Positions 2,335-63,163 of a DNA stretch of 64,000 nucleotides are shown here, piece after piece. How positions within the stretch are numbered: position 1 is the stretch's first letter; each line of letters begins with the position of its first letter. A program made the translations under genes and the position numbers. The DNA is taken from contig NC_043013.1 of the NCBI RefSeq assembly GCF_006345805.1, positions 5,208,001 to 5,272,000 of the forward strand, written 5' to 3'. This DNA comes from Octopus sinensis (lineage: Eukaryota). A model generated the notes under the pieces. The model did not search any database. It was not told where the DNA came from and was given only the letters and a program-made list of their open reading frames with translations.

Positions 2335-3275
2335 TAACTGACTGGAATTGTAGGCCCGTCTCTTGCAATTTCGATCAATTATATCTTGTCCTCCCTCTTG
2401 TATAGAAGTGTGGCTACAATCCAGCCTACCTCTACTTCTGGGGGGACATTTTAAAGTTTTATCCGGGATGTCCTACGTCCCAGATATAAAGGTAAAAATA
2501 AAATATTTCCACTTTGCAAGGTTCGAGTCGAGTACACCCTTGCATGCTCCGTTGACTCGAACCTTGCTTCTATTGTGGCGAATTTACCGCCTCTGGTTAG
2601 ATACTTGATATCTTTCATAGTCGCACCAAGACACTTTTCGATGGTGCTTTCCTCCAGGTGTTCAAATCTTTTTTTTTCTCTACATTGTTGGCTGTTTTTC
2701 TACTCCTGTATTTTGAGTATTTAACAACAAGATACGCTTTCGATAAAACAGTTGCTCCCGTGTCACTCTCTCTCCCTCACTCTTCCTCCCTTGCTCACGT
2801 GGCTCCCATGTGACCATCCGCCATCTTTCTTCTCCTAATTTCTGTTTCTTTCTTTCTCTCAGTTGTAGCTGGATCAAGGAAGACGTGTTCTTGTCTGTCT
2901 CCTGTTCAAGCTTGACTTATGCGTTCATCACCACAACCTCGTTTAGGCTTAGCAGCCCTTTCTGTTTGTTTTCACTGTCCTGTTTGTGTTACCAATTTTG
3001 ACCCGCCGCAAAATCCCAAATTTTATTTACTTTGCTTTGTGGGAGCATATATTGTTGTTAAATGCATATATTGTTGTTAAAAGAGTATATTGTTGTTAAA
3101 TGCTTGAAATACAAGAGTAGAAAATCAGCCAACAACTGATGAAGGGTCGCTTTTTGTGTTGTTTGTCTTGTTTTCCATTTCTGTCTTTTATTACTCAAAA
3201 AAATAGTTCATATTCCATGTACTTGTACTTCTTGTTTTTTGGTGTACACTTTTCGTGGCGTCCTGTGCCCACATA

Positions 3276-15460: not shown

Positions 15461-18446
15461 CTCAGAGGACTGCTAACACTCAGTAACAGGACAAAAATCC
15501 CGTTCTTGAGAGACTTTGTTGCATGCAATCAAGCCTTATGCATAGCACTTATGGAAACACACCTGTAACCGGACGTAGCAGATGCGGAAATACACATACC
15601 ACAGTATGTTGTACTACAGACCGACAGAAAAGAAAGGAGTCATGGAGGAGTTGCTATGTACATCCACGAGGACCTCACACTCCAGGTCATTTTGTCATAC
15701 TCAAATTCGGTGTGTGACACACTAATTGTACATATAAGGCAACTTGGTGTAGTTATATGTGCTACATATCGCCCTCCAGATGCCCCAAGCCATGTAGGCA
15801 AGTTTGAAGACTGCCTTATAAAAATAGAAGTTCTAGTCACATTAGAACAACACATAAGTGTACTTCTTATGGGAGACTTCAATCTACCCAATGTCAGATG
15901 GCCCGAGGGCCTTTCTCTCCCAGGAATGACACGATGTGAACGAGGACAGGCGAGGTCCCTCCTGAACCTCATCAACACTCTGTACATGGAGCAAGTAATA
16001 CTCCAACCAACCAGGGCAGGTAACATACTGGATCTCTGCTTCACAAATAATATGGATCTCATCCATAATGTGAAAGTGACACCGACACTACTCTCGGATC
16101 ACAACATGATAGAGCTGACCATGTACGGGCAAAAGGAAAGTATGGACATGCAGCCTACAAGAAACTCTCAGAATCTTTCCAGCTTGAACTTCCATAAGGC
16201 AAACTGGAAACAAATTGAGAAAGAGATCCTCAAACAAAACTGGCCTGAATGTCTCTCCTCGCCAGACATCGACATGAAACTTCAACAATTCATGTCTGTA
16301 ATGCAAACCATATGCTACAAATGTGTCCCAGAGAGAAAGGCCACTGTACACAAGAACAAAATCCCCAGAGAGAGGAAAATTCTAATGAGACTGTGTACAA
16401 AAGTTTCAAATCGGCTAAACAAACAAATTGAAAGCAGTGAAAAGTCCCGCCTGAAAATAAAACTGTTGGAAATTGAAAAATGTCTGCAACTCTCCCATGA
16501 AAAAGAAAGAGCAGACAAAGAAGCCTGGGCTATAGACAACATAAAATCTAACCCCAGAGCTTTCTATAGGTATGCCAAAGAAACAGCTATGGTGCACTGT
16601 AGGATAGGGCCACTCCTTGAAAAGGATGGCACACTCACAGGAAATCCAATGAGGGTAAGTGAAATACTAAATGAGCAATTCAAGAGTATTTTCACTCCAC
16701 TCCTAGGGCATTTTCAAGTCAGCAATCCAACTGACTTCTTTACCACTGCAGATATAAAATCAGAGGCAGCGATGATTGATTACATCAATATAAAGGAAGA
16801 CGATGTAATAAAGGCTATAGATGAAATGAAAACAAACTCAGCTACTGGCCCCGATGGATTCCCGGCAATCCTTCTAAAAGTATGTAAGAGAGTCCTAGCA
16901 AGACCACTGCAGTTCCTCTTTCAGAGCTTCCTTGCAACTGGCAAACTTCCAAGAAAACTGAAGGAAGGTAAAATATGCCCTATTCATAAAGGAGGTAGCA
17001 GAGCGGAGGCCAAGAACTACAAACCTATCTCTCTGACCTCATACATCAGCAAGGTCATGGAACGAATAGTCAGAAGGAAACTAATCACCTTCCTTGAAGA
17101 AAATGACTTACTGCCTGACACCCAACATGGTTTCCGACCAGGAAGAAGCTGCTTAACTCAGCTCCTACAACACTATGACTGGGTGCTGAAACGACTGCTC
17201 AACCACTAAAATGTGGAAGTCATATATCTCGACTTTGCAAAGGCCTTTGATAAAGTCAATCATGGAATGATATGTCACAAACTGCGTGATCTTAGCATAG
17301 TTGGAAAACTAGGAGAATGGCTTCATGACTTTCTGAAGGATAGAAGTCAGGTGGTAGTAGCGGTGTTCCGTAAGGCACTGTTTTGGGACCACTACTGTTC
17401 ATAATGGCCCTCTCAGACATGCCCTCAGCCACGCAGAGAGCCACGATCACAAGTTAATGCAGATGATACAAAAGTTTCACAGGCAATACAGAACCCTGAA
17501 GATACTAAGCACCTGCAATGTGAGCTGGACAAAATATACAAGTGGGCTGAAAAGAATAGCATGCAGTTCAATGCTGAAAAGTTTCAAGCTTTATGCTATC
17601 AGCATGCAAAACTGAATGCAATACCCAAGGAATACACTGGACCCGGAGGGATTGCAATCCCAGAGGCACAATCAGTGCAAGACCTGGGTATTTACATGAG
17701 TAATGATGCAACCTTTCATATGCATGTTGCTAAATTGGCAATGAATTGTAGGCGGCTGACCGGATGGCTTCTTAGAACCTTTAGAACAAGAGACCAGGAA
17801 ACCATGATGGTCCTCTGGAAGACACTTGTCCTAAGCCACTTTGACTATTGCTCTCAGCTATGGTCACCATCCAGTGTCAAGTTAATCACAGAACTTGAGG
17901 CGATCCAACAAAGCTACACGAAGAAGATAGCCTCTGTGCAGCATATAAGCTACTGGGAAAGACTCAAGAGATTGAGCCTCTATTCCTTAGAGCGTAGGCG
18001 AGAAAGATATGCCATAATATACATCTGGAAGATCCTAGAAGGACTTGCCCCAAACTTTGGCATCGAGAGTTACACAAATGCTAGAACTGGGCGCCACTGC
18101 ATGGTGCCAAGGACTCCACATTTACCATCAAGATGTAGGACAAGATACTGTGATAGCCTGGGCTTCAGAGGCCCACAGCTCTTCAATATCCTCCGGAAGA
18201 ACCTAAGAGACCTGCATGGGGTGGATGCAGATGTCTTTAAAATAAAACTGGATCTCTTCCTGTCAGGTGTCCCAGACGAACCAACTTCACGGCAGGAGGT
18301 GCAGATGAGGGCAGCTGCATCGAACTCTCTCATGCACCAAATGGCAGTTGCTAAAAAGCATTTGTGAAGTAAGATCATGTAGCAACACCAAATGGCGGTG
18401 CCTCAGCATGGCCACAGCTCGTGAGCTGAAACTTGATGAAATAAAA

Positions 18447-18450
<4 letters not shown>
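15461..18450 (+). mobile_element. CR1-group LINE, nearly full ORF2 (APE endonuclease + RT), disabled
   Basis: ETHL, YRPP, GDFN, SDH endonuclease motifs. NYKPISLTS, QHGFRPGRSC, YLDFAKAFDKV RT motifs. Stops near 15570 and at 17207-17209, a deletion near 17370 relative to the second copy, a frameshift near 17455. (TA)n on both sides. Confidence 0.93.
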
Positions 18451-18482
<32 letters not shown>

Positions 18483-18874
18483 CAAGGTCAGACTTATATA
18501 AAGGTCATGGTTCAGGAATCCCTAAACATCAGGGGCTGCAATGAGTCACTAAATGTTGGAGTTAGAAATTTTAAAAAATATTTATATACCAATCAAATAT
18601 TTTGCAATACTTTAAACTTTTGTTTTAATCCAATAGAGCTCTTTTAGCATTGTTGACCCCTCTTTTAATCTATCAGGTCTTTTATGTTTAAAAAATTTGA
18701 CTGAATCCTTCTAAATCTACTTTTTTTTATTTCTTTTTAAAATTTTGGATCCTCTTCAAACTGTTTGAGGCCCCTAGATTTAGTAGAACCTTTTTTATTA
18801 TACTTTGAATTAGTTAAATCACAGGGCTCCACTAGAACTAAATCCAGCCCTCTGTGTGTGTGTGTATATATAAA

Positions 18875-19300
18875 TCATCATCATCGTTTAACGTCCGCTT
18901 TCCATGCTAGCATGGGTTGGACAGTTCAACTGTGGTCTGGGAAGCCCGAAGGCTGCACCAGGCCCAGTCTGATCTGGCAGTGTTTCTACAGCTGGATGCC
19001 CTTCCTAACGCCAACCACTCCGTGAGTGTAGTGGGTGCTTTTTACGTGCCAACGACACAGGTGCCAGACAAGGCTGGCGAACGGCCATGCTCGGATGGTG
19101 CTTTTTATGTGCCACCAGCATGGAGGCCAGGTGAGTCTGGCAACAGCCACGATCGAATGGTGTCTGTTACATGCCACTGGCACAGAGGCCAGTCAATGCA
19201 GCGCTGGCTACGGCTACGTTCGGACGGTTCTCTTACATGCCACTGGCACTGGTATCACAACTACAAATTCCATTGATGTTGATCAATCTATCATCATTGT
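18875..19300 (-). mobile_element. RTE-derived 3'UTR element (four modules)
   Basis: Same tail and modules as 34405-35285. Further copies near 3980-4420, 10200-10380, 26930-27200, 28440-28655, 42770-42965, 44840-45168, 53190-53365 and 59010-59110. Confidence 0.75.
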
Positions 19301-19339: not shown

Positions 19340-20270
19340 TAGGCATAGGAGTGGCTGTGTGGTAAGTTGCTTGCTTTGATCTTCTATCTCAGGGGAGGGG
19401 CTATAGAGAATTTTATAGAAAGTTTCTTTAATGGTCGGGACCTGATAGACCCCACTTGTATTCCAGAGTGGCCTCCACAGGTGGCTGCTCTGGTACTAGA
19501 AGAAAGGAACTTCTATTATATAATGGACTCCTTCTCAAAGGAAGAGTATAGATCTTGTTTATGGGCCCCCAACTTGCGGCTGCAAGAATGCCTACAGGAG
19601 GCAAGAAAGTTGATTGGGGACTCATTTGTGTAATAGGTTTATCGCCTTATTATGTGTATTAAATTGTTTATATTTGTAATGGACTTTTTAGTCCATAAAG
19701 AGGAATAATAGTAAAATTGTAAGAGGGTTAATACCTCATTCAGTGTTTTTAAAAAGAACAATGTTTTAGAGAAGTGAAAGTCGGCGGGCGCTTTTCGTTT
19801 TCTCCCATCCTTATCATCCTTGTATCATTATCATTCATCTCATTAATGTCCACGTCCAGCCTGCAAGCTACCTTACTCTATGTACTGCCTTTATGGCAAA
19901 CTTAATAAAATAAAGTAGCTTGCTTACCAACCACATGGTTCTGGGTTCAGTCCCACTGCGTGCCACCTTGGGCAAGTGTCTTCGACTATAGCCTCAGGCC
20001 GACCAAAGCCTTGTAAGTGGATTTGGTAGACGGAAACTATATATGTGTATGTGCGTGTATATGTTTGTGTGTCTGTGTTTGTCTCCCCCAACATCGCTTG
20101 ACAACCGATGCTGGTGTGTTTACGTCCCCGTAACTTAGCAGTTCGGCAAAAGAGACCGATAGAATAAGTACTAGGCTTACAAAGAATAAGTCCTGGGGTC
20201 GATTTGCTCGACTAAAGGTGGTGCTCCAGCATGGCCACAGTCACATGACTGATACAAGTAAAAGAGTAAA
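19340..20270 (+). mobile_element. SINE family 1 interrupted between A and B boxes by the ORF1-only element
   Basis: Head 19340-19376, remainder 19913-20270. Confidence 0.88.
19377..19912 (+). mobile_element. 5'-truncated, diverged relative of the ORF1-only element, inserted at the same SINE position
   Basis: 13-bp TSD AAG(T/A)GCTTGCTT-type (19364-19376, 19913-19925; 1 mismatch). Encodes PEWPPQVAALVLEE...EARKLIG. Terminal ~170 bp homologous to 30566-30750. Confidence 0.85.
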
Positions 20271-21088
20271 CATATACAGTACAGTACTATTTCTACTTCA
20301 TGGATTTTCACCTATTGCAGTGGGGGGGGGAATGGAACAGCCACGATAGTCGAGGGATTACCATGTATATGAATATCATACATATATATAAGTTAAAAGA
20401 AAAAACTCGTACACATTAATATCCATCTTTAGACATCAGAAAGTTCAGAAATGCAACAAAAATTGAAATTCTTTAGGTAAAGTGAAAGAAGGTCGTGAAA
20501 CAATAGCACGTGATATGAAATTAACGAAACTCAGCGAAGGTAAAGAATACGCACACCTGGTGTTTAAAGTTAGGGTTACGCCAACAATGGGTTGTGTGCA
20601 TATTCTTTACCCCCGTCCGAAACTCGATCTAAAATATTTTCTATAGCTTCTTCACGAACTGCCGGAGTTCCTCTCTGACACATTTATGCACCAAGCAGTT
20701 AAAAAGAAGAAATTATTGAGATTAGTAATCATTCTGCCCCAGTTTAGACATCATTTCGGATCTTTTCACTTTCCATCATTTCTTGTAAATTGAAATATCA
20801 AATTTGACATTAGTGTGGAAAAATTTACTAGGAATCCAACAGAGAAAAGGATATTGATTGTCAGACAGCAAAAATTATCCAGATATTTTATTAGCAACCT
20901 CAATTACAATCGGGTTCAAAGTTGAAGAGAAATCTCTGGAAAACAAAAGCTACCTATCACCCGAATGTTTCAAAATCTCTCAACAACAGCTATGCTGACC
21001 AATTTCTACTCGCACAGTTGGTACAACAGTACAAAACGGTGATGCAATACTTGCAATATAACATTTTCAAACAGATAGGGAAAAAAAA

Positions 21089-26900: not shown

Positions 26901-28189
26901 TGCATACAATATGTCCTTTCAAGTGTCTTCATCATCATCGTTTAGCGTCCGCTTTCCATGGTGGCATGGGTTGGACGGTTCAACTGGGGTCTGTGAAGCC
27001 AGAAGGCTGCACCAGGCCCAGTCTGATCTGGCAGTGTTTCTACGGCTGGATGCCCTTCCTAACACCAACCACTCCATGAGTGTAGTGGCTGCTTTTTACG
27101 TGCCAGACGAGGCTGGCAAACGGCCACGATCGGATGGTGCTTTTTACGTGCCAGACGAGGCTGGCAAACGGCCACGATCGGATGGTGCTTTTTATGTGCC
27201 ATATATATATACTTTCCACTATGGCACTTATGTAGCTTGAGTGCAGATTTATGTATAGTGATAATACTTATAAGTAAGTTATAAGTGACAGGTTTATCAA
27301 TATAGATTCTTAAGAAAGAAAATATATTTATTATCTATCTCAGTAGAAACCACATAGATAAGATAATACACCACATCGTAAAAGTGGTACCCAATCAGCC
27401 GTTATAACAACCCACCGTTACAGTAGTATTGCAATTTTTATGTGAGTATGTGGCTGTTTTCAGGTTAGTGTGTTGGCACATGTTGTTGAATGCATAGTTT
27501 CAAAAGGATTGCAAAAGACAGAATTAAAACTACAGACTCTGTTTTGATTATTTTATCTTACTGCTGTTATCACCTCAAAAGTTATGAAATAGTTGATAGT
27601 CATCCTGTAGTTAATACTTTGACCTATAAAATAAACTCCCACCAGTTTATATCTTGATTTTATTTTGATTTACTTTTATTAAGATTTATTGACTTAAGCC
27701 TTTCGTTACTGTATTTATTTTGAGATGCTTTGTGTTTCATTCAATTACTTTAAATATAACAAAGAATTTAGTAAAATAACTTAGTTACCATTCAGCTTGT
27801 ATTAGGAACATAAATTGTGACTAAGGTTTGGTGGAAGATTTTGATTCAAAACTTATGAAAATAAGACATTTGTACAACAGAGCCAGAGCTGGTTTCAACT
27901 GGGTTGGTAACAACAGGGTTAAAGTCTACAGGAGATAACAATATGTGTTTAGTCTATTTACATGTAACAAGGAGACTTCTTTATGCATTCAAAAATGGTT
28001 TATTTGTTACATTAATAGGAAAGGGGTTTATGAATCACAATTAATGGAGACATTCCGATGAAACAGCATCATATGACACATACAGAAAGTCTGTCCAGAA
28101 ACTCTGCATTTGGACTAATTTTTACATATCAAATATATACACATATATATATACATAGATGCACATATACATGTATGTATCTGTATATA

Positions 28190-29290: not shown

Positions 29291-30750
29291 GTAATCCTTA
29301 AAATCCTTAAATCCTTAAAAATGTTTTAGCCCGAAGGCCGTGGCCATGCTGGGATGAAGAAAAAATGCACATTTTGTAGAGGACATCACCAACAAGTGAA
29401 AAATATGTAAACACAATGAGGGACAAGTACAAGACAAAATACCACAAGAATATAACTCTTTATCAGTTGCTGACTTTATTACTCCCTATTTTGTGCTTTT
29501 AACAACAGTATAGGGAACATCAGAAGACAGCAGTATTTCTGTCTTCCAGATCCACTCACAAAACATTTAGTTGGCCTGGTGCTATAGTAGCAGACACTTG
29601 TCCAAGGCGCCATGTGGTGGGTCAGAACATGGGACTACATGATCAAACCTTTCATTACTGTATTTATTTTGAGATGCTCTGTGATTCTTTCAATTATTTT
29701 AAATATAATAAAGAATTTAGTAAAATAAGTTATCTTTAAGCTAGTGTTAGGAACATAAATCGTGACTAAGGTTTGGTGGAAGATTTTAATTCAAAACTTA
29801 TGAAAACAACGTATTTGTACTCAGAACCAGAGCCAGTTTCAGCCAGGTTAAGAAACCTGCTTCTTTAACCCTTTTGTTACCAACAAAAGGGTTAAAGAAG
29901 CAGGTTTCTTAACCACACCTCCATATGGTATGCCTAAAATGTCTCATTTAACCTTCCTTATTTGTCTGATGTGAATCAGTGACTCCCAATGTGTTCAGTC
30001 TTGTGAACTTCTTTTATTTTATGAATAGCAGAGAATATAAGTCATTTGACCGATTTTTCTCATGCTTTGAAAGAGCTCTCTGCTCACTGACATTTTATAA
30101 ACTAACAAAAAAACTTGTGTCCTTAGTTCCATCTCTCAATTAAAAGACCTATATGACTGAATAAGGATATATAGATCCTTCTTTGTTTTTTTTTACCTGT
30201 TTCAGTCATTTGACTGAGGTCATGCTGGTGCACTGCCTTTAGTTGGTCAAATCAACCCCAGGACTTATTCTTTGTGAGCCTAGTACTTATTCCATCGATC
30301 TCTTTTGCCAAACCGCTAACTTACAGGGACATAAACACACCAATATTGGGTGTCAAGCGATTGTGAGGGGAACAAACACAGACACACAAACATACACACA
30401 CACATACACACACACACACAAACATGACGGGCTTCATTCAGTTTCCTTCTACCAAATCCACTCACAAGGCTTTGTTCGGCCTGAGGCTATAATAGAAGGC
30501 ACTTGCCCAAGGTGTCACACAGTGGGAATGAACCCGGAACCATGTGGTTGGAAAGCAAGCTTCTTTATTTCATTAAATTTGCCACAAGGGCAGCACACAG
30601 AGAGAAGCTTGAGGGCTAGACAGAGACATTAATGGGATGAATAGTGATGATACAAGGATGATAAGGATGGGAGGAGACGAAAAGCACCCGCTGACTTTCA
30701 CTTCTCTAAAACATTGTTCTTTTTTTCTTTTTTTTTTTTAAACACAATGA

Positions 30751-31148
30751 TAGGCGCAGGAGTGGCTGTGTGGTAAGTAGCTTGCTAACCAACCACATGG
30801 TTCTGGGTTCAGTCCCACTGCGTGGCATCTTGGGCAAGTGTCTTCTGCTATAGCCCCGGGCCGACCAATGCCTTGTGAGTAGATTTGGTAGACGGAAACT
30901 GAAAGAAGCCTGTCGTATATATGTATATATATATGTGTATGTGTGTGTTTGTCCCCCTAGCATTGCTTGACAACCGATGCTAGTGTGTTTACGTCCCCGT
31001 CACTTAGCGGTTCAGCAAAAAGAGACCGATAGAATTAGTACTGGGCTTACAAAGAATAAGTCCCGGGGTCGATTTGCTCGACTAAAGGCGGTGCTCCAGC
31101 ATGGCCGCAGTCAAATGACTGAAACAAGTAAAAGAGAGTAAAAGAGTA
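30751..31148 (+). mobile_element. SINE family 1 nested in the 3'UTR of the ORF1-only element
   Basis: Full length, AATGA duplicated at 30746-30750 and 31149-31153. Confidence 0.9.
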
Positions 31149-31261
31149 AATGAGGCAATAAACCTCTTAAACAGTACAAAATTAAAAATAAAACACAAAC
31201 ACAAGGTAATAATCCTCTCACTTTTTGCATTTTTAGTCCCTTTTTGAGGTAATACACCTCT

Positions 31262-32456
31262 TCAATTTTTCCGCCCGGCCAGGCTCCTCGCTTCATCAGA
31301 GCACCTGGTCCATTCCGAACTTAAAGGTTTCAACATAAATCTGAAGGAGTCCTTCTGGAAGGAGTTCGTTATCTTCCATAAATCGTTCTCCCACATGACC
31401 TCCGCAGCCACCTGCGAAGGCCACTCAGGGTCCTCCGTGTAGGACAGAAGCCCCTCCCACCGGCACTTCCTTTCAATTTTTTTATATTTCATTTTGCAAG
31501 GTTCCTCCTTTGTGGAAGAGGACTAAAAATTTCTCCTCCAGCAGCACACCCACCAAAGGAGAATCGGGACACGCCGGCAGCGTGTCACAATCCGCTGGCA
31601 ATGTCCAGTTTTTCTTTTTTCTTTTCTTTTTCCCTTGGGCTGTGGAGGATGGTGTTCCCTTGCTGTGTCCAGTAGGTCCTCCTTTTCTCCCGCAGCTCTC
31701 GGGTTCTTCGGTGGGCAACCATTGTCGCCCACCTTTCGCTTTCGTTTTTTCAAGGAGTGGAAACCTCCTCGACATCCTCCTCCTTCTCTCCCTCCATTGA
31801 GGGAGAAGGGAGTGGTTCCTCTGTTAACTGCTCCAGGATCCTATTTTGGTCCTTGGGGCAGTTTTTCTTGATGTGGCCGGTCTCCAGGCACAGGTGACAC
31901 TTGGCGGGGGGCGTCCCTCGAGTATCACTGGATACCTAGACCCAGCCATCCTCAAAAAATCTGGGAAAACCAGACTTTCGGCTGATTGGGTCCATAGGAT
32001 CAACACAGCTTTTGACCCCTCCCAATCAGCCGTAGGCAAAATTTTTACGTTGAGCAGCTTGGTACTGCTACCACCCAGACCCTGGCGGATAGAGTCCTCT
32101 ATCCACTCGGGCTCAATTCCGGGTGGCAAGCCGCAAACCCAAGCCCTCGTTAACTTCTTTCCACAATAACTAGGAAGAAACATTATTTCCTTCCCCTCGA
32201 GGGGCCGGCTTGCAAAATCGCAAGCTTCTTTGGGGCAGTCAAATAGCAACCAGACCGTTGCAAATTTGACTCCCCGTGAAATAAATTTAATAGCTGGCAT
32301 GTATTCTGCCAGCTCTTTCAAAATTGTGGCTTTCGGGAAGACGGTTATGGTATCGAGCGACTTTGAATAAGTCCTCAACACCACCGTCTTCCTTTCGAGC
32401 TCTTTTAGCCATGATTTGGGAGGCGTTGATTTCCACACTAATATTTCCTTTGCCAT
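31262..32456 (-). pseudogene. Disrupted gag-like ORF1 (RRM-like + Cx2Cx4Hx4C knuckle + PEWPxQVAA C-terminal domain)
   Basis: ORF-track segments 31824..32483 and 31262..31492, plus the knuckle frame starting at 31902. Frameshifts and stops lie between them. Confidence 0.8.
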
Positions 32457-33040
32457 TTTTTTTTTTTTAAATAAAAAGTTCAAATACAGTTCGTCAATAC
32501 GTTTTCAAATAAAGAAAAATACACAAAAAAAGAAAGAAGACACAATAGAAGGGAAGAAAAAATTTAAATAACAGTTCAAATAAAGTTCTTTTTTTTTTAA
32601 AATAAATGATGGCTGTGAAAAGAGAGTTCAAATCCAGGCAAAGAAATAAATTTTCGGCCGAAATGTACTCCTGGCCAATCCTTTTAATCCACGTGGGCAC
32701 AAAAATTTTCAAATACAATTTCTCACTATTATGCGAGACAACACACACGTCTCCACCGCAAGGCAGACAAAAAGCTTCGAATCCAGTAAGGACTCCCTGC
32801 CTGTTCAAAAAAATAAAACCAACAGGCAACAAATCCTACCGGACTCAAAAAGCAAAAAGTCTTACCTTACAGCGTCTTTCAGTTCAACTTCCGCCAGCTG
32901 CATACCAGCGTGACGACTTCAACAGGTGCGTGAAGAACACTGTTTTTGTTCTTTTTTCGTTTTAGGAAAGAGCTCAAGTTACAATGTCCTCTCTGTTCAA
33001 CCGGAAGCAAGCTTCTTACCACACAGCCATTCCTGCACCT

Positions 33041-33910
33041 CCGGATTCCCGTTTGCGCCGTGAACAGGAATTAATCTTCTCTCTTCGCTCTTTTACGCCA
33101 TTTGGTCTCAACTCTCCCCCCTCCTCATCTAACCCTCCTCATCTAACCTCCCCCCGACCCCTACTTCTCTTCAGTCCTTCATTCTTTCACCCCTACTCCT
33201 CTTCCCTTCTTCCCTCTTTCTTCTTCCCTCTTCCCCTTCCCTCTTTCTCTCTCCTCCCTCACTCCCCTTCTCTCTCTCTCTCTCCTCCTCTCCCTCTATC
33301 CTCCCTCCTCTTCTCCTCTCCTTCCTTCTCCCCCTTCTCTCCCCTCTTCTCCTCTCCTTCCTTCTCTCCCTTCCCCTCCTCTTCTCCCCTTTCCTTCTCC
33401 CCCCTCACCCTCACCCCTCATCTCTCCTCTCTCTCCCCTTACCTCCCCCCTCTTCCCCTCTCCCCTCATCTCCTCTCTCTACACTACACCATACGACTTT
33501 ACACATCACATCATATATACATACACACGTCCAGACCTCTCATACGCACTAATACTCTCTCATACACACACACACTCTTATGTTGGGGCGAGGTCATTTA
33601 ACCCTATTATCTCCCCTAATTTCGCTCTTGCGTCTCACGTTTGATCTTTGACTTCTGGCCGAAATCAGATCGCCATGTTGATTCACTAGCCTCTGCACGC
33701 ATTTTTTTTTCTCTCCTTCTTTCTGTGTTTCTTTTCTGTGTATCTTTCTGTTGAAGAGCGTAGGCTCGAAACGTTAAAGACTTGTTTTATTTATATTTCC
33801 TGAGTGCCATACTAATACAATTGTTTGTTTGTATTCCACCTGCCTTCGTCTTTTGTTTATTTCCGTAAACCTGCCTTCGTCTTTTGTCTATTTTCATAAA
33901 GCTTCCCGTT
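33041..33910 (+). mobile_element. Penelope-like element 3' end: GIY-YIG C-terminus, pyrimidine tract, terminal repeat with degenerate hammerhead (33743-33780)
   Basis: RLRREQELIFSLRSFTPFGLN motif, then TCTTT-CTGTTGA-AGAGC(GTAG)GCTC-GAAACGTT^AAAGA. Confidence 0.75.
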
Positions 33911-33966: not shown

Positions 33967-34366
33967 ACTCTTACTCTCTCTTTTACTCTTTTACTTGTTT
34001 CAGTCATTTGACTGCGGCCATGCTGGAGCACCGCCTTTAGTCGAGCAAATCGACCCCGGGACTTATTCTTTGTAAGCCCAGTACTTATTCTATCGGTCTC
34101 TTTTGCCGAACCGCTAAGTGACGGGGACGTAAACACACCAGCATCGGTTGTCAAGCAATGCTAGGGGGACAAACACACACACATACACACATATATACAT
34201 ATATACGACAGGCTTCTTTCAGTTTCCGTCTACCAAATCCACTCACAAGGCATTGGTCGGCCCGGGGCTATAGCAGAAGACACTTGCCCAAGATGCCACG
34301 CAGTGGGACTGAACCCGGAACCATGTGGTTGGTTAGCAACCTGCTTACCACACAGCCACTCCTGCA

Positions 34367-34370
<4 letters not shown>
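33967..34370 (-). mobile_element. SINE family 1
   Basis: Matches consensus. Confidence 0.88.
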
Positions 34371-34404
<34 letters not shown>

Positions 34405-34409
<5 letters not shown>

Positions 34410-35285
34410 TCATCATCATCATCGTCGTTTAACGTCCGTTCTCCATGCTAGCATGGGTTGGACGGTTCGACCGGGGTTCTGGGAAGCCAGAAGGCTGCAC
34501 CAGGCTCCAGTCTAATCTGGCAATGTTTCTACAGCTGGATGCCCTTCCTAACGCCAACCACTCCGTGAGTGTAGTGGGTGCTTTTTACGTGCCACCTGCA
34601 CAGGTGCCAGGCGGGGCTGGCAACGGCCACGGTCAGATTGGTGTATTTTATGTGCCACCGGGACGGAAGCCAGTCGAGGCGGTGCTGGCATCGGCCACGG
34701 GTCGGATAGTGCTTTTTACGTACCACCAGACCAGGGATCCTGGCTGGTTCAATTCGATTTCGATTTCGCTTGCCCCAACATGTCTTCACAAGCAAAGGGG
34801 GTTGGCATGGGTGCCTGTCGTACGGTCGCATTGGAGTATTTTACGTGCCACGGCCACGAGTCGGATAGTGCTTTTTACGTACCACCAGACCAGGGATCCT
34901 GGCTGGTTCAATTCGATTTCGATTTCGCTTGCCCCAACATGTCTTCACAAGCAAAGGGGGTTGGCATGGGTGCCTGTCGTACGGTCGCATTGGAGTATTT
35001 TACGTGCCACGGCCACGAGTCGGATAGTGCTTTTTACGTACCACCAGGCCAGGGATCCTGGCTGGTTCAATTCGGTTTCGATTTCGATTTCGCTTGCCCC
35101 AACATGTCTTCGCAAGCATGGGGGGTTGGCATGGGTGTCTGTCGTCGGATGAGGTTCTATATCGACTTCGCTTGCCTCAACCGGTCTTTGTGTCCAAGGG
35201 AGGAAAGGCATTCATAAGTGGGCTGGGCTCACTTGTCCTGCCTGGTCTTCTCACGTACAGAATATTTCCAAAATATATATATAGT
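34405..35285 (-). mobile_element. RTE-derived 3'UTR element with modular repeat array and (GAT)n tail
   Basis: Ends ...CGGACGTTAAACGATGATGATG on the minus strand. Contains repeated GTGCTTTTTACGTGCCACC modules and a 133-bp tandem duplication. Confidence 0.75.
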
Positions 35286-43312: not shown

Positions 43313-43723
43313 ATTTTACTTGTTTCAATCATTTGACTGTTGCCATGCTGGAGCACTGCCTTAAGGGGTTTTGGTCGAAGAAATTGATCCTAGGACTTAT
43401 TCTTTGTAAGCCTAGAATTTATTCTGTCGGTCACTTTTGCTGAACCGCTAAGTTATGGGGAAATGAACACACCAGCATCAGTTGTCAAGTGATGGTACGG
43501 GAGGGGGCAAACACAGACACAAAGACACACATACATAAATACATACATATATATATATACATCGAGTTTCTTTCAGTTTCCGTCTACCAAATTCATTCAG
43601 AAGGTTTTGTTCAGCCTGAAGCTATAGCAGAAGACACTTGCCCAAGTTGCCACACAGCGGGACTGAACCCAGAACCATGTGGTTAGGAAGCAAGCTTCTT
43701 ACTACACAGCCATGCCTGTGCCT
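43313..43723 (-). mobile_element. SINE family 1 (diverged)
   Basis: Matches consensus. Confidence 0.8.
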
Positions 43724-60364: not shown

Positions 60365-60447
60365 AGGGGAAGTCCAAAAGAAGGGAAGACAGAGGAAGAA
60401 AATCGTCAATGGTTCACATGTGGTTGCATTTTGAGTATATACATATA

Positions 60448-60850
60448 TAGGCGCAGGAGTGGCTGTGTGGTAAGTAGCTTGCTAACCAACCACATGGTTC
60501 CGGGTTCAGTCCCACTGCGTGGCATCTTGGGCAAGTGTCTTCTGCTATAGCCCCAGGCCGACCAATGCCTTGTGAGTGGATTTGGTAGACGGAAACTGAA
60601 AGAAGCCTGTCGTATATATATATATATATATATCTGTATATGTGTGTTTGTGTGTCTGTGTTTGTCCCCCTAGCATTGCTTGACAACCGATGCTGGTGTG
60701 TTTACGTCCCCGTCACTTAGCGGTTCGGCAAAAGAGACCGATAGAATAAGCACTGGGCTTACAAAGAATAAGTCCTGGGGTCGATTTGCTCGACTAAATG
60801 CGGTGCTCCAGCATGGCCGCAGTCAAAATGACTGAAACAAGTAAAAGAGT
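60448..60850 (+). mobile_element. SINE family 1
   Basis: Matches consensus. Confidence 0.88.
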
Positions 60851-61288
60851 ATATACTAGCTGGCCCCGTGCCGTCAAAAATGACCGCTAATTGTAGTATT
60901 TTATATATAAATATGGATAGTAAATCAAATTAATATGCTTATCAATGTTATCTAGTGGTTGTCTTTTGAGATGCGACATCGATCATCGTTTGTTACTGAA
61001 AGAGCACTGGTTCACATATCCAAACATCCACATACTTCCCTTGTACACGCACACACATGCAAACATATACTCACACACAGTTGAAATGCCCCCACTACCG
61101 CCCTTCCTTATTCATCTATCACCCCTTCGTTTCTCATTCATATGTTGTGACGGAAGAAAACATGAGTATTATTATAGTAGATATGTATGCATATTTGTAT
61201 GTGTGCATGTCTGTTTAAGTTCCAAATACCAACTCAATAATGACCAAATTATTCTATCAAATATATTAATTTTTGAAATAAATTAAAA

Positions 61289-61441
61289 AAGTAGCTTGCT
61301 TACGAACCACATGCTTCTGGGTTCAGTCCCACTGCGTGACATCTTGGGAAAGTATCTTCCACTATAGCCTCAGGCCGACCAAAGCCTTGTGAATGGATTT
61401 GGTAGACGGAAACTAAAAGAAGCCCATCGTATATATGTATG

Positions 61442-61487
<46 letters not shown>

Positions 61488-63163
61488 TGTATGTATGTAT
61501 GTATGCATGTGTGTTTATGTTTGTCCCCCCAACATTGCTTGACAACTGATGGTGATGTGTTTACATCCCCGTAACTTAGCAGTTCGGCAAAAGAGACTAA
61601 TAGAATAAGTACTAGGTTTACAAAGAATAAATCCTGGGATTGATTTGTTTGACTAAAGGCAGTGCTCCAGCATGGCCACAGTCAAATGACTGAAACAAGT
61701 AAAAGAGTAATATCATTATTTTCAAAATTAATTAAATTAAAATTTGCTTATTTTCAACAGAAACATAGGGTTAATAGGGCTAAACTTTCAATCTTAGCAA
61801 CCTTAGATTTGTTTCATTCTATTTTGAAAAGTTTGAACATTTTGTACTGAAAGCACTGGCTGATAGCTATGCCCCTTCTTTGCATTGTTGACTTCCAACT
61901 CAACACTTCTAACTCAGTTTCTTATCCTTTCGCTCAATGTTTCTTCTTTTGCATGAAAAGAAAAGCAGAACCAGTAAATAAATTTTTTAAAATCCTGATA
62001 TATGACCTAATGGCGTAGGAGTGGCTGTGTGGTAAGTAGCTTGCTTACAAACCACATGGTTCTGGGTTCAGTCCCACTGCGTGGCACCTTGGGCAAGTGT
62101 CTTCTACTATAGCCTAGGGCTGACCAGAGCCTTGTAAGTGGATTTGGTAGACAGAAACTGAAAGAAGCCCATTGCATATATGTATATATATATATGTGTG
62201 TGTGTGTGTGTATGTGTGTGTGTATACGTTTGTGTGTCTGTGTTGTCCCCCCAACATTGCTTGACAACTGATGGTGATGTGTTTACATCCCCGTAACTTA
62301 GCAGTTCGGCAAAAGAGACTAATAGAATAAGTACTAGGTTTACAAAGAATAAATCCTGGGATTGATTTGTTTGACTAAAGGCAGTGCTCCAGCATGGCCA
62401 CAGTCAAATGACTGAAACAAGTAAAAGAGTAATATCATTATTTTCAAAATTAATTAAATTAAAATTTGCTTATTTTCAACAGAAACATAGGGTTAATAGG
62501 GCTAAACTTTCAATCTTAGCAACCTTAGATTTGTTTCATTCTATTTTGAAAAGTTTGAACATTTTGTACTGAAAGCACTGGCTGATAGCTATGCCCCTTC
62601 TTTGCATTGTTGACTTCCAACTCAACACTTCTAACTCAGTTTCTTATCCTTTCGCTCAATGTTTCTTCTTTTGCATGAAAAGAAAAGCAGAACCAGTAAA
62701 TAAATTTTTTAAAATCCTGATATATGACCTAATGGCGTAGGAGTGGCTGTGTGGTAAGTAGCTTGCTTACAAACCACATGGTTCTGGGTTCAGTCCCACT
62801 GCGTGGCACCTTGGGCAAGTGTCTTCTACTATAGCCTAGGGCTGACCAGAGCCTTGTAAGTGGATTTGGTAGACAGAAACTGAAAGAAGCCCATTGCATA
62901 TATGTATATATATATATGTGTGTGTGTGTGTGTATGTGTGTGTGTATACGTTTGTGTGTCTGTGTTTGTCCCCCCAACATCGCTTGACAACCGATGCTGG
63001 TGTGTTTACAACTCCGTAACTTAGCAGTTCGGCAAAAGAGACTGATAGAATAAGTACTAGGCTTACAAATAATAAGTCCTGGAGTCGATTTGCTTGACTA
63101 AAGGCGATGCTCCAGCATGGCGACAGTCAGATGACTGAAACAAGTAAAAGAGAGTAAAGAGTA
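61289..63163 (+). repeat. Three SINE family 1 units (61289-61710, 62011-62432, 62733-63163) produced by a 722-bp tandem duplication
   Basis: About 61526-62247 repeats almost exactly at 62248-62969. Identical ORF-track entries are offset by 722. Confidence 0.9.

What the first reader, a model, noticed from the sequence alone, without database searches (positions are those of the whole stretch)
30553..33040. Sequence-specific retroelement that targets the Pol III head of a SINE
Seen: two independent insertions (19377-19912 plus, 30566-33004 minus) interrupt SINE family 1 copies at the same nucleotide. Each duplicates the same 13-mer AAG(T/A)AGCTTGCTT, between the SINE's A and B boxes, and each is in the same orientation as its host. 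The two inserts differ in length and in protein sequence, so they are not copies of one composite. Known: Tx1-clade LINEs often target multicopy sequences (tRNA arrays, 5S, U2 snRNA, microsatellites, other transposons). Inference: this lineage uses a very high-copy SINE as a harmless landing site and silences it by separating the A box from the B box. I know of no description of this in cephalopods.
Basis: partly seen in the sequence, partly recalled or inferred. Interest (0 to 1): 0.9.

Follow-up and report, generated by a model that had tools for sequence, protein, structure and literature searches.

The report
Octopus LINE that lands in SINEs
Two defective copies of one octopus retrotransposon lineage sit at exactly the same nucleotide of two unrelated copies of an abundant SINE, and a third copy in Octopus sinensis starts at that nucleotide too, so the lineage very probably uses the SINE as its landing site, a new target for a known habit of such elements.

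Summary
Two inserts (window 33004-30566 on the minus strand, 19377-19912 on the plus strand) split two SINE copies after SINE nucleotide 35. Each is flanked by a 13-bp duplication of SINE nt 23-35 (13/13 and 12/13) and lies in the host's orientation. Joining the flanks restores a gap-free SINE.

The two host SINEs are not sister copies, and the inserts are different subfamilies. They share about 40% amino-acid identity in the last ORF and about 85% DNA identity in the last 160 nt. A single SINE-plus-insert ancestor is therefore excluded.

The only close protein homologue in the databases is in Octopus sinensis (locus L001). Its 5' end abuts the same SINE head at the same nucleotide.

The long insert carries a LINE-type ORF1 (two RRM-like folds and one CCHC knuckle, frameshifted), a remnant of the last ORF, and a 3'UTR with a nested SINE. 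No endonuclease or reverse transcriptase was found, so assignment to the Tx1 clade is untested. The genome-wide flank census could not be run, because no octopus DNA is in the searchable collections.

Verdict: a target-specific non-LTR retrotransposon lineage with a new target class. This is a new member of a known kind and moderately interesting.

The parts
33005..33039 (-). Host SINE A, head (SINE nt 1-35) with the A-box-like motif. Its last 13 nt (33017-33005, AAGAAGCTTGCTT) are the upstream copy of the target-site duplication.
30566..33004 (-). Insert A (2439 bp), a defective and probably 5'-complete copy of the LINE-like element. It comprises a 5'UTR, ORF1, a remnant of the last ORF and a 3'UTR.
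32457..33004 (-). 5'UTR of insert A (548 nt). It starts with CC directly after the SINE head, as the O. sinensis copy does. It holds T5-T7 runs from nt 147 on, which are Pol III terminator-like.
31605..32456 (-). ORF1 of insert A: two RRM-like domains plus one CCHC zinc knuckle. It is broken by a frameshift near 31899-31911 and by a premature stop and a second frame change after 31753. It is 71% identical in protein to the intact O. sinensis homologue P0001. The 3' limit is approximate.
31262..31522 (-). Last ORF of insert A (86 codons plus stop). It is 40% identical in protein to the ORF at the 5' end of insert B. I interpret it as the C-terminal remnant of an ORF2 left by an internal deletion. 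The homology of insert A to the O. sinensis copy ends at about insert nt 1500, roughly window 31505.
30750..31148 (+). Nested SINE of a young subfamily inside the 3'UTR of insert A, in the opposite orientation and flanked by a CATT duplication. It is not part of the element.
30566..30724 (-). Conserved 3' terminal module of the element in insert A. It is 85% identical to 19751-19912 and ends ...AATGAAATAA.
30553..30565 (-). Downstream copy of the 13-bp target-site duplication of insert A (AAGAAGCTTGCTT). It carries the same host-specific variant base (A at position 4) as the upstream copy.
30191..30552 (-). Host SINE A, remainder (SINE nt 36 to the 3' tail), including the B-box-like motif.
19342..19376 (+). 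Host SINE B, head (SINE nt 1-35). Its last 13 nt (19364-19376, AAGTTGCTTGCTT) are the upstream copy of the duplication.
19377..19912 (+). Insert B (536 bp), a 5'-truncated copy of a different subfamily. It holds an ORF open from the 5' end (19379-19630 plus stop), a 3'UTR and the conserved 3' module (19751-19912), and ends ...AATAAAATAA.
19913..19925 (+). Downstream copy of the target-site duplication of insert B (AAGTAGCTTGCTT), 12/13 identical to the upstream copy.
19926..20330 (+). Host SINE B, remainder, including the B-box-like motif.

Best explanation
Inserts A and B are dead copies of one lineage of non-LTR (LINE-like) retrotransposon, from two diverged subfamilies. The lineage integrates sequence-specifically into the 5' region of an abundant octopus SINE.

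Inferred mechanism, by analogy with target-primed reverse transcription:
1. An element-encoded endonuclease, not seen here, recognises the SINE sequence around GGTAAGTAGCTTGCTTACC.
2. It nicks the bottom strand opposite the T|AAG step, between SINE nt 22 and 23.
3. The exposed 3' end ...CTACTT can pair with the RNA's terminal ...AUAA and primes reverse transcription of the element RNA.
4. The top strand is cut 13 nt downstream, after GCTT at nt 35.
5. Repair gives the fixed 13-bp duplication, a constant orientation and a constant 3' end. The 5' end is variable: complete in insert A and the O. sinensis copy, truncated in insert B.

The last roughly 160-190 nt of the 3'UTR is far better conserved between subfamilies than the coding sequence. 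It is therefore the likely RNA module recognised by the reverse transcriptase.

Insert A is non-autonomous. It has an ORF1 with two RRM-like folds and a CCHC knuckle, now frameshifted, joined by an internal deletion to the last ~75 codons of a second ORF.

Landing in a SINE that makes up a large share of the genome offers many neutral sites. Splitting the A-box-like motif from the B-box-like motif would incidentally disable that SINE copy as a Pol III template. The element cannot itself be a Pol III transcript, because T5-T7 runs start at nt 147.

Shown here: the junctions, the duplications, the independence of the hosts, the relatedness of the inserts, the ORF1 fold and the third junction in O. 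sinensis.
Inferred: the endonuclease, the nick positions, the role of the 3' module, genome-wide specificity and the clade.
For: - Exact junctions and duplications of 13/13 and 12/13 nt.
- Joined flanks align gap-free to 13 intact SINE copies.
- Host A carries a subfamily variant (AAGAAGC, also in the SINE at 43700) in both copies of the repeat. A duplication of host sequence predicts exactly this.
- The host SINEs are not sisters: 83% identity against a mean of 88%, ranks 14 and 10 of 14, and one shared non-majority base.
- The inserts share 40% protein identity in the last ORF (E about 4e-9) and 85% DNA identity over the last 160 nt. The rest is 35-55% identical in DNA.
- The only close ORF1 homologue among 5.8 billion proteins is O. 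sinensis P0001. At locus L001 its element starts right after GGCTGAGGCATGGCTGTGTGGTAAGTAGCTTGCTT, a 35-nt SINE head with its own unique upstream flank.
- ORF1 is modelled as two RRM-like domains (pLDDT 81.6; best PDB matches are tandem-RRM proteins) plus a CCHC knuckle. This is the Type I LINE ORF1p layout (PMC5203782).
- There are no other copies of the element's 3' module in the window or in L001, so no counter-example with a non-SINE flank exists.
- Target-specific LINEs that land in other transposons, tRNA genes and microsatellites are established (PMC4494074, PMC4640811).
- L1-Tx1 families are recently active in O. vulgaris (PMC13282606).
Against: - The sample is only three 5' junctions and two 3' junctions. 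The two in the window were noticed because they lie in SINEs.
- No copy with an endonuclease or reverse transcriptase was found. The element class rests on ORF1, the duplications, the 5' truncation and the absence of terminal repeats.
- The O. sinensis copy has no 3' part and no SINE body within 10 kb, so its 3' junction is unknown.
- The SINE head is not recognised as a tRNA, so 'Pol III head' rests on motif resemblance.
- The genome-wide census could not be done.
Confidence: 0.8

Rival explanations
1. One ancestral 'SINE plus insert' composite was copied, by segmental duplication, by retrotransposition of the whole composite through the SINE tail, or by gene conversion between SINE copies. 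The copies then diverged by deletion.
For: The junction on the SINE side is identical in all copies. The last 160 nt of the two inserts are 85% identical.
Against: - The host SINEs are each other's near-worst match among 15 copies, share one non-majority base, and have unrelated flanks outside the SINE.
- The coding parts of the inserts are only 40% identical in protein, far more diverged than their hosts at 83% DNA identity.
- Insert B keeps the complete SINE head but lacks the element's 5' 1.9 kb. This would need a deletion ending exactly at the head boundary.
- The host-specific variant base is present in both repeat copies of host A.
Confidence: 0.03
2. The element is an ordinary LINE with loose target preference, for example for TT|AA-like nicks. 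The coincidence reflects a hot spot in a very abundant repeat plus ascertainment bias, not true sequence specificity.
For: SINE copies fill about 10% of the window. The inferred bottom-strand nick (..ACTT|ACC) resembles the T-rich sites used by L1-type endonucleases (established knowledge). Only three copies are known.
Against: - The same nucleotide, the same orientation and the same 13-bp stagger occur three times, in two diverged subfamilies. One copy was found without reference to its flanks.
- At random the expected rate is about 1e-4 per event (from the counts).
- The top-strand cut is also fixed, after GCTT, in full-length and truncated copies alike.
Confidence: 0.1
3. The SINE head and body are the element's own termini. 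The SINE family would then be an internal-deletion derivative of this LINE, produced by recombination between two 13-bp direct repeats, so nothing was 'inserted'.
For: SINEs commonly share sequence with LINEs. Direct repeats at deletion ends are a known route to short derivatives (established knowledge).
Against: - The flanking SINE parts of A and B are as close to random SINE copies as those copies are to each other (83-91%), while the internal parts of A and B are barely alignable. One co-evolving unit would not show this.
- Both 13-mers of host A carry the same host-specific variant.
- Insert B has a complete head next to a 5'-truncated interior.
- The SINE's 3' tail does not resemble the element's 3' end.
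Confidence: 0.03
4. The structures are chimeras made by template switching of a reverse transcriptase from LINE RNA to SINE RNA, as in U6-L1 chimeras, and not insertions into SINE DNA.
For: The 5' side reads SINE nt 1-35 followed by LINE sequence from a variable point. That is the layout template switching gives.
Against: - The switch point in the SINE would have to be nt 35 three times.
- The 3' side continues with SINE nt 23 to the end, with a 13-nt overlap. Switching does not explain this.
- The joined flanks make one intact SINE.
Confidence: 0.02

Closest known systems
Tx1-clade target-specific LINEs that land in other transposons (Tx1L in the piggyBac-type Tx1D of Xenopus; Tx1-Mar in Mariner-N4_AMi of crocodilians; relatives in LTR and Harbinger elements) - PMC4494074
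   Same: Repeated insertion at one position of a dispersed multicopy mobile element, with fixed orientation and a target-site duplication of fixed length (16 bp for the SINEU-3/Tx1-Mar target). A Type I-like ORF1 (RRM plus CCHC) is reported as consistent with the Tx1 clade (PMC5203782). L1-Tx1 families are present and recently active in octopus (PMC13282606, PMC8967140).
   Different: The target here is a SINE, at a site between its A- and B-box-like motifs. No RT or APE sequence of the element is available, so clade membership is untested. The copies seen are all defective.
LINEs specific for small RNA genes: Dewa (tRNA arrays), Keno/Utopia (U2 snRNA), Mutsu (5S rRNA), NeSL-1_TV and planarian LIN families (tRNA genes) - PMC4640811, PMC4494074, PMC5340908
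   Same: The target is a short Pol III/snRNA-type multicopy sequence, and the insertion lies inside the transcribed, promoter-bearing part in a fixed orientation.
   Different: The target is a retroposed, dispersed SINE with a very high copy number, not a functional gene family. The head is too diverged to be called a tRNA. Whether real tRNA genes are also hit is unknown.
R1-clade site-specific LINEs (R1 in 28S rDNA with a 14-bp duplication; TRAS/SART, Waldo, Mino)
   Same: A precise staggered cut gives a duplication of fixed length in the 13-14 bp range. The clade is APE-type with two ORFs (from my knowledge of the family).
   Different: From my knowledge, the R1 clade is essentially arthropod and its ORF1 has several CCHC knuckles. 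Here there is a single knuckle after two RRM-like domains, and the host is a mollusc. RT was not available for a test.

Membership tests
Target-specific non-LTR retrotransposon (general kind) | Independent copies occupy the same nucleotide position of the same target sequence | tested here: met
   All three 5' junctions lie after SINE nt 35 (window A, window B, O. sinensis L001). Both 3' junctions lie before SINE nt 23. The hosts are independent.
Target-specific non-LTR retrotransposon (general kind) | Constant orientation relative to the target, and a target-site duplication of fixed length | tested here: met
   All three copies have the orientation of the SINE. The duplication is 13 bp in both complete cases, 13/13 and 12/13.
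Target-specific non-LTR retrotransposon (general kind) | Common 3' end with variable 5' truncation, and no terminal repeats | tested here: met
   The last 160 nt are shared at 85%. Insert B begins about 1.9 kb into the unit defined by insert A. No LTR or TIR appears in the sequence.
Target-specific non-LTR retrotransposon (general kind) | The great majority of genomic copies lie in the target | not testable with these tools
   No octopus DNA is in the metagenome, GTDB-genome or viral collections. Only one extra locus was reachable through a protein.
Target-specific non-LTR retrotransposon (general kind) | Encodes a reverse transcriptase and an endonuclease (autonomous master copies exist) | tested here: inconclusive
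   No RT or EN is present in insert A, insert B or L001. The C-terminal ORF found no relatives. ORF1 relatives carry only zf-CCHC.
Tx1 clade (L1 group) | The RT domain groups with Tx1 in phylogeny, and the endonuclease is APE-type | not testable with these tools
   No RT or APE sequence of this lineage was recovered.
Tx1 clade (L1 group) | ORF1 of Type I layout (RRM(s) plus CCHC knuckle) | tested here: met
   The AlphaFold model of P0001 has pLDDT 81.6, two RRM-like beta-alpha-beta units, and top PDB matches to tandem-RRM proteins. Pfam finds zf-CCHC. This is not diagnostic, because Jockey-superfamily LINEs show all ORF1 types (PMC5203782, citing Metcalfe and Casane).
RLE-type site-specific LINEs (R2, NeSL/Utopia, Dong-R4) | Restriction-like endonuclease downstream of RT, usually in a single ORF | not testable with these tools
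   No ORF2 is available. A separate RRM-CCHC ORF1 and a 13-bp duplication fit APE-type elements better. This is inference from established knowledge, not a test.
tRNA-derived SINE (the host) | Internal Pol III promoter: A and B boxes at tRNA-like spacing | tested here: met
   TGGCTGTGTGG lies at nt 11-21 and GGTTCAGTCC at nt 54-63 in the aligned copies. This is motif resemblance only.
tRNA-derived SINE (the host) | The head is recognisable as a tRNA (cloverleaf) | tested here: not met
   ARAGORN finds no tRNA in the window. Rfam finds no tRNA match in an intact copy even at E <= 10.

The most novel reading that the evidence does not exclude
An undescribed lineage of site-specific LINEs has kept a SINE's promoter region as its exclusive landing site through subfamily diversification, and probably across octopod species. 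The target is itself a mobile, evolving, hundred-thousand-copy element, which would make this a long-lived parasite-on-parasite relationship in SINE-dominated octopus genomes. If its endonuclease is as precise as the three junctions suggest, it would be a natural enzyme addressing a defined 13-bp-staggered site present at very high copy number.
Probability: 0.55. Interest if true: 0.6.

Novelty: new member of a known kind. Interest (0 to 1): 0.5.

Why it matters
Target-specific LINEs are the natural models for programmable, RNA-mediated gene insertion (R2, R1, Tx1), and each new specificity widens the set of endonuclease-target pairs.

A SINE as target would be the most copy-rich safe harbour known for such an element. 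It would show that the nesting habit seen for DNA transposons in frogs and crocodilians also operates on SINEs in molluscs.

It also matters for repeat annotation in cephalopods. SINE copies split by this element will be counted as separate fragments. ORF1-only remnants such as LOC115225585 are currently annotated as host genes.

If the census fails, the finding reduces to a local curiosity.

Tried and rejected
1. The C-terminal ORF alignment (A1) against 5.8 billion proteins gave no hit.
2. The ORF1 profile against 1.84 billion representatives gave 62 distant ORF1-like proteins. Those with names are cephalopod. None has EN or RT domains.
3. The last word-indexed search, with the 20-sequence ORF1 alignment, returned only two proteins because low-complexity words swamped the candidate list. 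The octopus loci of the distant relatives therefore could not be fetched.
4. Scans of the metagenome, GTDB-genome and viral collections for the 3'UTR core, the 3' junction and the intact SINE all gave zero hits.
5. Exact look-up of window ORFs to identify the source genome found nothing on record.
6. Rfam on the locus found no ribozyme or other known RNA at the 5' end or elsewhere.
7. RNAalifold on the conserved 3' module is uninformative with two sequences.
8. The body-only SINE at 61289 was tested as a third insertion. The 437 bp upstream show no similarity above shuffled controls and no ORF, so it was not counted.
9. I tested whether the LINE at 15656-18479 plus the following repeat and host SINE B form a larger composite. 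This was rejected, because the second LINE copy and its neighbouring repeats have a different arrangement.
10. A search for the missing 3' half of the O. sinensis copy found no SINE body and no C-terminal ORF within 10 kb.
Full report
**What is in the sequence**

The window is AT-rich (37% G+C) and carries about 20 copies of a roughly 400-bp SINE. The sequence context and protein relatives place it in an octopod genome.

Sixteen copies contain the segment GGCTGTGTGGTAAG(N)AGCTTGCTT(N)CCAACCACATGG. Shuffled controls expect none. Only two SINE heads lack the sequence that should follow them, at 33039-33005 (minus strand) and 19342-19376 (plus strand).

Each orphan head is followed by foreign DNA: 2439 bp in insert A (33004-30566) and 536 bp in insert B (19377-19912). 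After the foreign DNA the SINE resumes, repeating the last 13 nt of the head.
- In A the repeat is AAGAAGCTTGCTT on both sides (13/13).
- In B it is AAGTTGCTTGCTT upstream and AAGTAGCTTGCTT downstream (12/13).

Removing insert A or B together with one repeat copy gives a sequence colinear with 13 intact SINE copies, with no gap at the joint.

**Are the two events independent?**

The evidence says yes.
- Over the 140 nt after the insertion point, host A and host B are 83% identical, while the mean over all 15 copies is 88%.
- Host B is the least similar copy to host A (rank 14 of 14), and host A ranks 10 of 14 for host B.
- They share one non-majority base, which a third copy also has.
- The DNA outside the SINEs is unrelated: GA-rich upstream of A, (TATC)n upstream of B.
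- Host A carries a subfamily variant (AAGAAGC rather than AAGTAGC) that another SINE at 43700 also has. The variant is present in both copies of A's 13-mer. A duplication of the host's own sequence at integration would produce exactly this. The alternative idea, that the two 13-mers are old internal repeats of a larger element, does not predict it.

**Are the two inserts related?**

They are related but distant.
- The last 160 nt are 85% identical. A global alignment shows 74-92% identity over the last ~150 aligned columns, against 35-58% upstream.
- Upstream, the similarity is visible only in protein. The 84-codon ORF that runs from the first bases of insert B to its stop matches the last ORF of insert A at 40% identity (tblastn E about 4e-9).

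A and B therefore represent two subfamilies with different 5' end points and the same 3' module. This is the pattern of 5'-truncated LINE copies.

**Anatomy of insert A**
- A 548-nt 5'UTR.
- ORF1 starting at 32456. It is interrupted by a frameshift near 31899-31911 and by a premature stop with a further frame change after 31753.
- A short spacer.
- An 86-codon ORF (31522-31265).
- A 3'UTR that contains a complete SINE of a young subfamily in the opposite orientation (30750-31148, flanked by CATT).
- The conserved terminal module, which ends AATGAAATAA.

No endonuclease or reverse transcriptase is present in A or B.

**A third, independently ascertained copy**

ORF1 of insert A was searched against 5.8 billion proteins. 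It found a single relative, the 281-aa Octopus sinensis protein LOC115225585 (P0001; 71% identity, full coverage). Its locus was fetched as L001.

The ORF there is intact, and the DNA upstream is homologous to the 5'UTR of insert A, though diverged. The element begins directly after GGCTGAGGCATGGCTGTGTGGTAAGTAGCTTGCTT. This is a 35-nt SINE head with its own unique upstream flank, and it ends at the same nucleotide as the heads in the window.

Both this copy and insert A start with CC. This suggests, but does not prove, that both are 5'-complete.

This copy was found without any reference to its flanks, so it is the one unbiased test available, and it agrees with the hypothesis.

Its 3' part is missing. 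Homology to insert A stops at about L001 10975, which corresponds to insert A nt ~1500. That is the same point at which insert A switches to the C-terminal ORF remnant. No SINE body, 3' module or C-terminal ORF lies within the next 10 kb. The coincidence of the two breakpoints is unexplained. It could mean that an ORF1-only non-autonomous form is older than both copies.

**What kind of element is it?**

- An AlphaFold model of P0001, built on 20 homologues (mean pLDDT 81.6), shows two beta-alpha-beta-beta-alpha-beta units. Its best PDB matches are tandem-RRM proteins such as SFPQ/NONO, HuR and hnRNP A1 UP1.
- Pfam and PDB sequence searches find only the CCHC knuckle.
- RRM(s) plus a CCHC knuckle is the Type I LINE ORF1p layout. 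It is reported in non-mammalian animals as consistent with the Tx1 clade, but it is also seen in other LINE groups (PMC5203782).

Taken together, the duplications, the 5' truncation, the shared 3' end and the absence of terminal repeats identify a non-LTR retrotransposon. Its clade cannot be decided without an RT.

A profile search of 1.84 billion representative proteins found 62 distant ORF1 relatives. Those with names come from O. sinensis, O. bimaculoides, O. vulgaris and Argonauta hians, and none has EN or RT domains.

**Mechanism (inferred)**

The geometry fits target-primed reverse transcription with two fixed nicks 13 nt apart.
- The bottom-strand nick lies opposite the T|AAG step (SINE nt 22/23). 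It leaves ...CTACTT-3', which can pair with the terminal ..AUAA of the RNA.
- The top-strand nick follows GCTT (nt 35).
- Because the element ends in AA and the duplication starts with AA, the true duplication could be 11-13 bp.

The 5' junction is identical in complete and truncated copies. This argues that top-strand cleavage is sequence-determined rather than set by microhomology.

The strong conservation of the 3' terminal module across subfamilies suggests that it is the RNA feature the reverse transcriptase recognises. With two sequences no structure could be tested.

The insertion lies between an A-box-like and a B-box-like motif, so the host SINE copy is presumably dead as a Pol III unit. 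That is a consequence of the insertion and not evidence of a function.

The element itself cannot be a Pol III product of the SINE head, because T5-T7 runs begin 147 nt into insert A and 111 nt into the O. sinensis copy. No ribozyme or other Rfam family was found at the 5' end.

**Comparison with what is known**

[quoted passage not shown] Their targets include rRNA, snRNA and tRNA genes, microsatellites, telomeres and other transposons (PMC4640811).

Within the Tx1 clade, known targets include a piggyBac-type element (Tx1D), a Mariner family (Mariner-N4_AMi, with a 16-bp duplication), LTR elements and Harbinger elements (PMC4494074).

L1-Tx1 families are part of the coleoid repeat complement, and 13 families are recently active in O. 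vulgaris (PMC8967140, PMC13282606). SINEs make up about 40% of octopus repeat content (PMC8967140).

A LINE that lands in a SINE therefore fits a known strategy with a new class of target. I found no paper describing it, but I could not consult Repbase.

**Limits**
- The decisive census of flanks could not be run, because none of the searchable DNA collections contains octopus sequence.
- The protein route yielded only one extra locus.
- The autonomous partner, the clade and the genome-wide specificity therefore remain open.

**Verdict**

Site-specific integration is the best explanation (about 0.8). Tx1 membership is plausible but untested. Novelty: a new member of a known kind. Interest: 0.5.

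Noticed in passing
window 61289-61710 (+), with 60852-61288 upstream: A SINE copy begins exactly at the first base of the same 13-mer (AAGTAGCTTGCTT), with no head upstream. It is preceded by ...TTTTTGAAATAAATTAAAA. The 437 bp upstream show no similarity to inserts A or B above shuffled controls and have no ORF. It could be a chance 5' truncation, or the 3' junction of an unrelated or very diverged element that uses the same site.
   Followed up: partly
L001 10001-10846 (Octopus sinensis CM016886.1): The ORF1 homologue is intact (281 aa) and annotated as a host gene (LOC115225585), although it is the 5' part of a SINE-inserted LINE remnant with no ORF2. Its homology to insert A ends at the same point (about insert A nt 1500) where insert A has its internal deletion.
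   Followed up: partly
window 15656-18479 (+) and 38149-36639 (-): An unrelated LINE with Exo_endo_phos_2 and RVT_1 domains (ORFs 15656-17209 and 17561-18367), plus a 90%-identical partial second copy. It ends about 0.9 kb upstream of host SINE B and is not connected with insert B.
   Followed up: partly
window 18874-19243, 34415-34726, 45165-44853, 28649-28454, 26929-27201, 42941-42770, 53370-53214, 4423-4272 and others: A second short interspersed repeat family (~150-300 bp, 77-89% identical). It gives the recurrent pseudo-ORF motif ...LQSDLAVFLQLDALPNANHS.SVVGAFYVPP... and often lies next to copies of the main SINE.
   Followed up: no
window 62012-62432 and 62734-63152: Two SINE copies with identical heads and identical upstream flanks, 722 bp apart. 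This is a local tandem duplication rather than two insertions.
   Followed up: no
window 30750-31148 (+), 33978-34378 (-), 60444-60851 (+): These three SINE copies are 96-98% identical to each other, far closer than the family mean of 88%, so they belong to a young subfamily. One of them is the copy nested in the 3'UTR of insert A, so SINE activity continued after insert A arrived.
   Followed up: partly
window 2418-2699 (-): A degraded fragment of a distantly related LINE ORF1 (37% protein identity to insert A ORF1 residues 42-119, E 5e-13), with no recognisable downstream ORF.
   Followed up: partly
window 33060-33600: A long GA-rich low-complexity tract lies immediately upstream of host SINE A. 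It gives a spurious 205-aa ORF on the plus strand.
   Followed up: no
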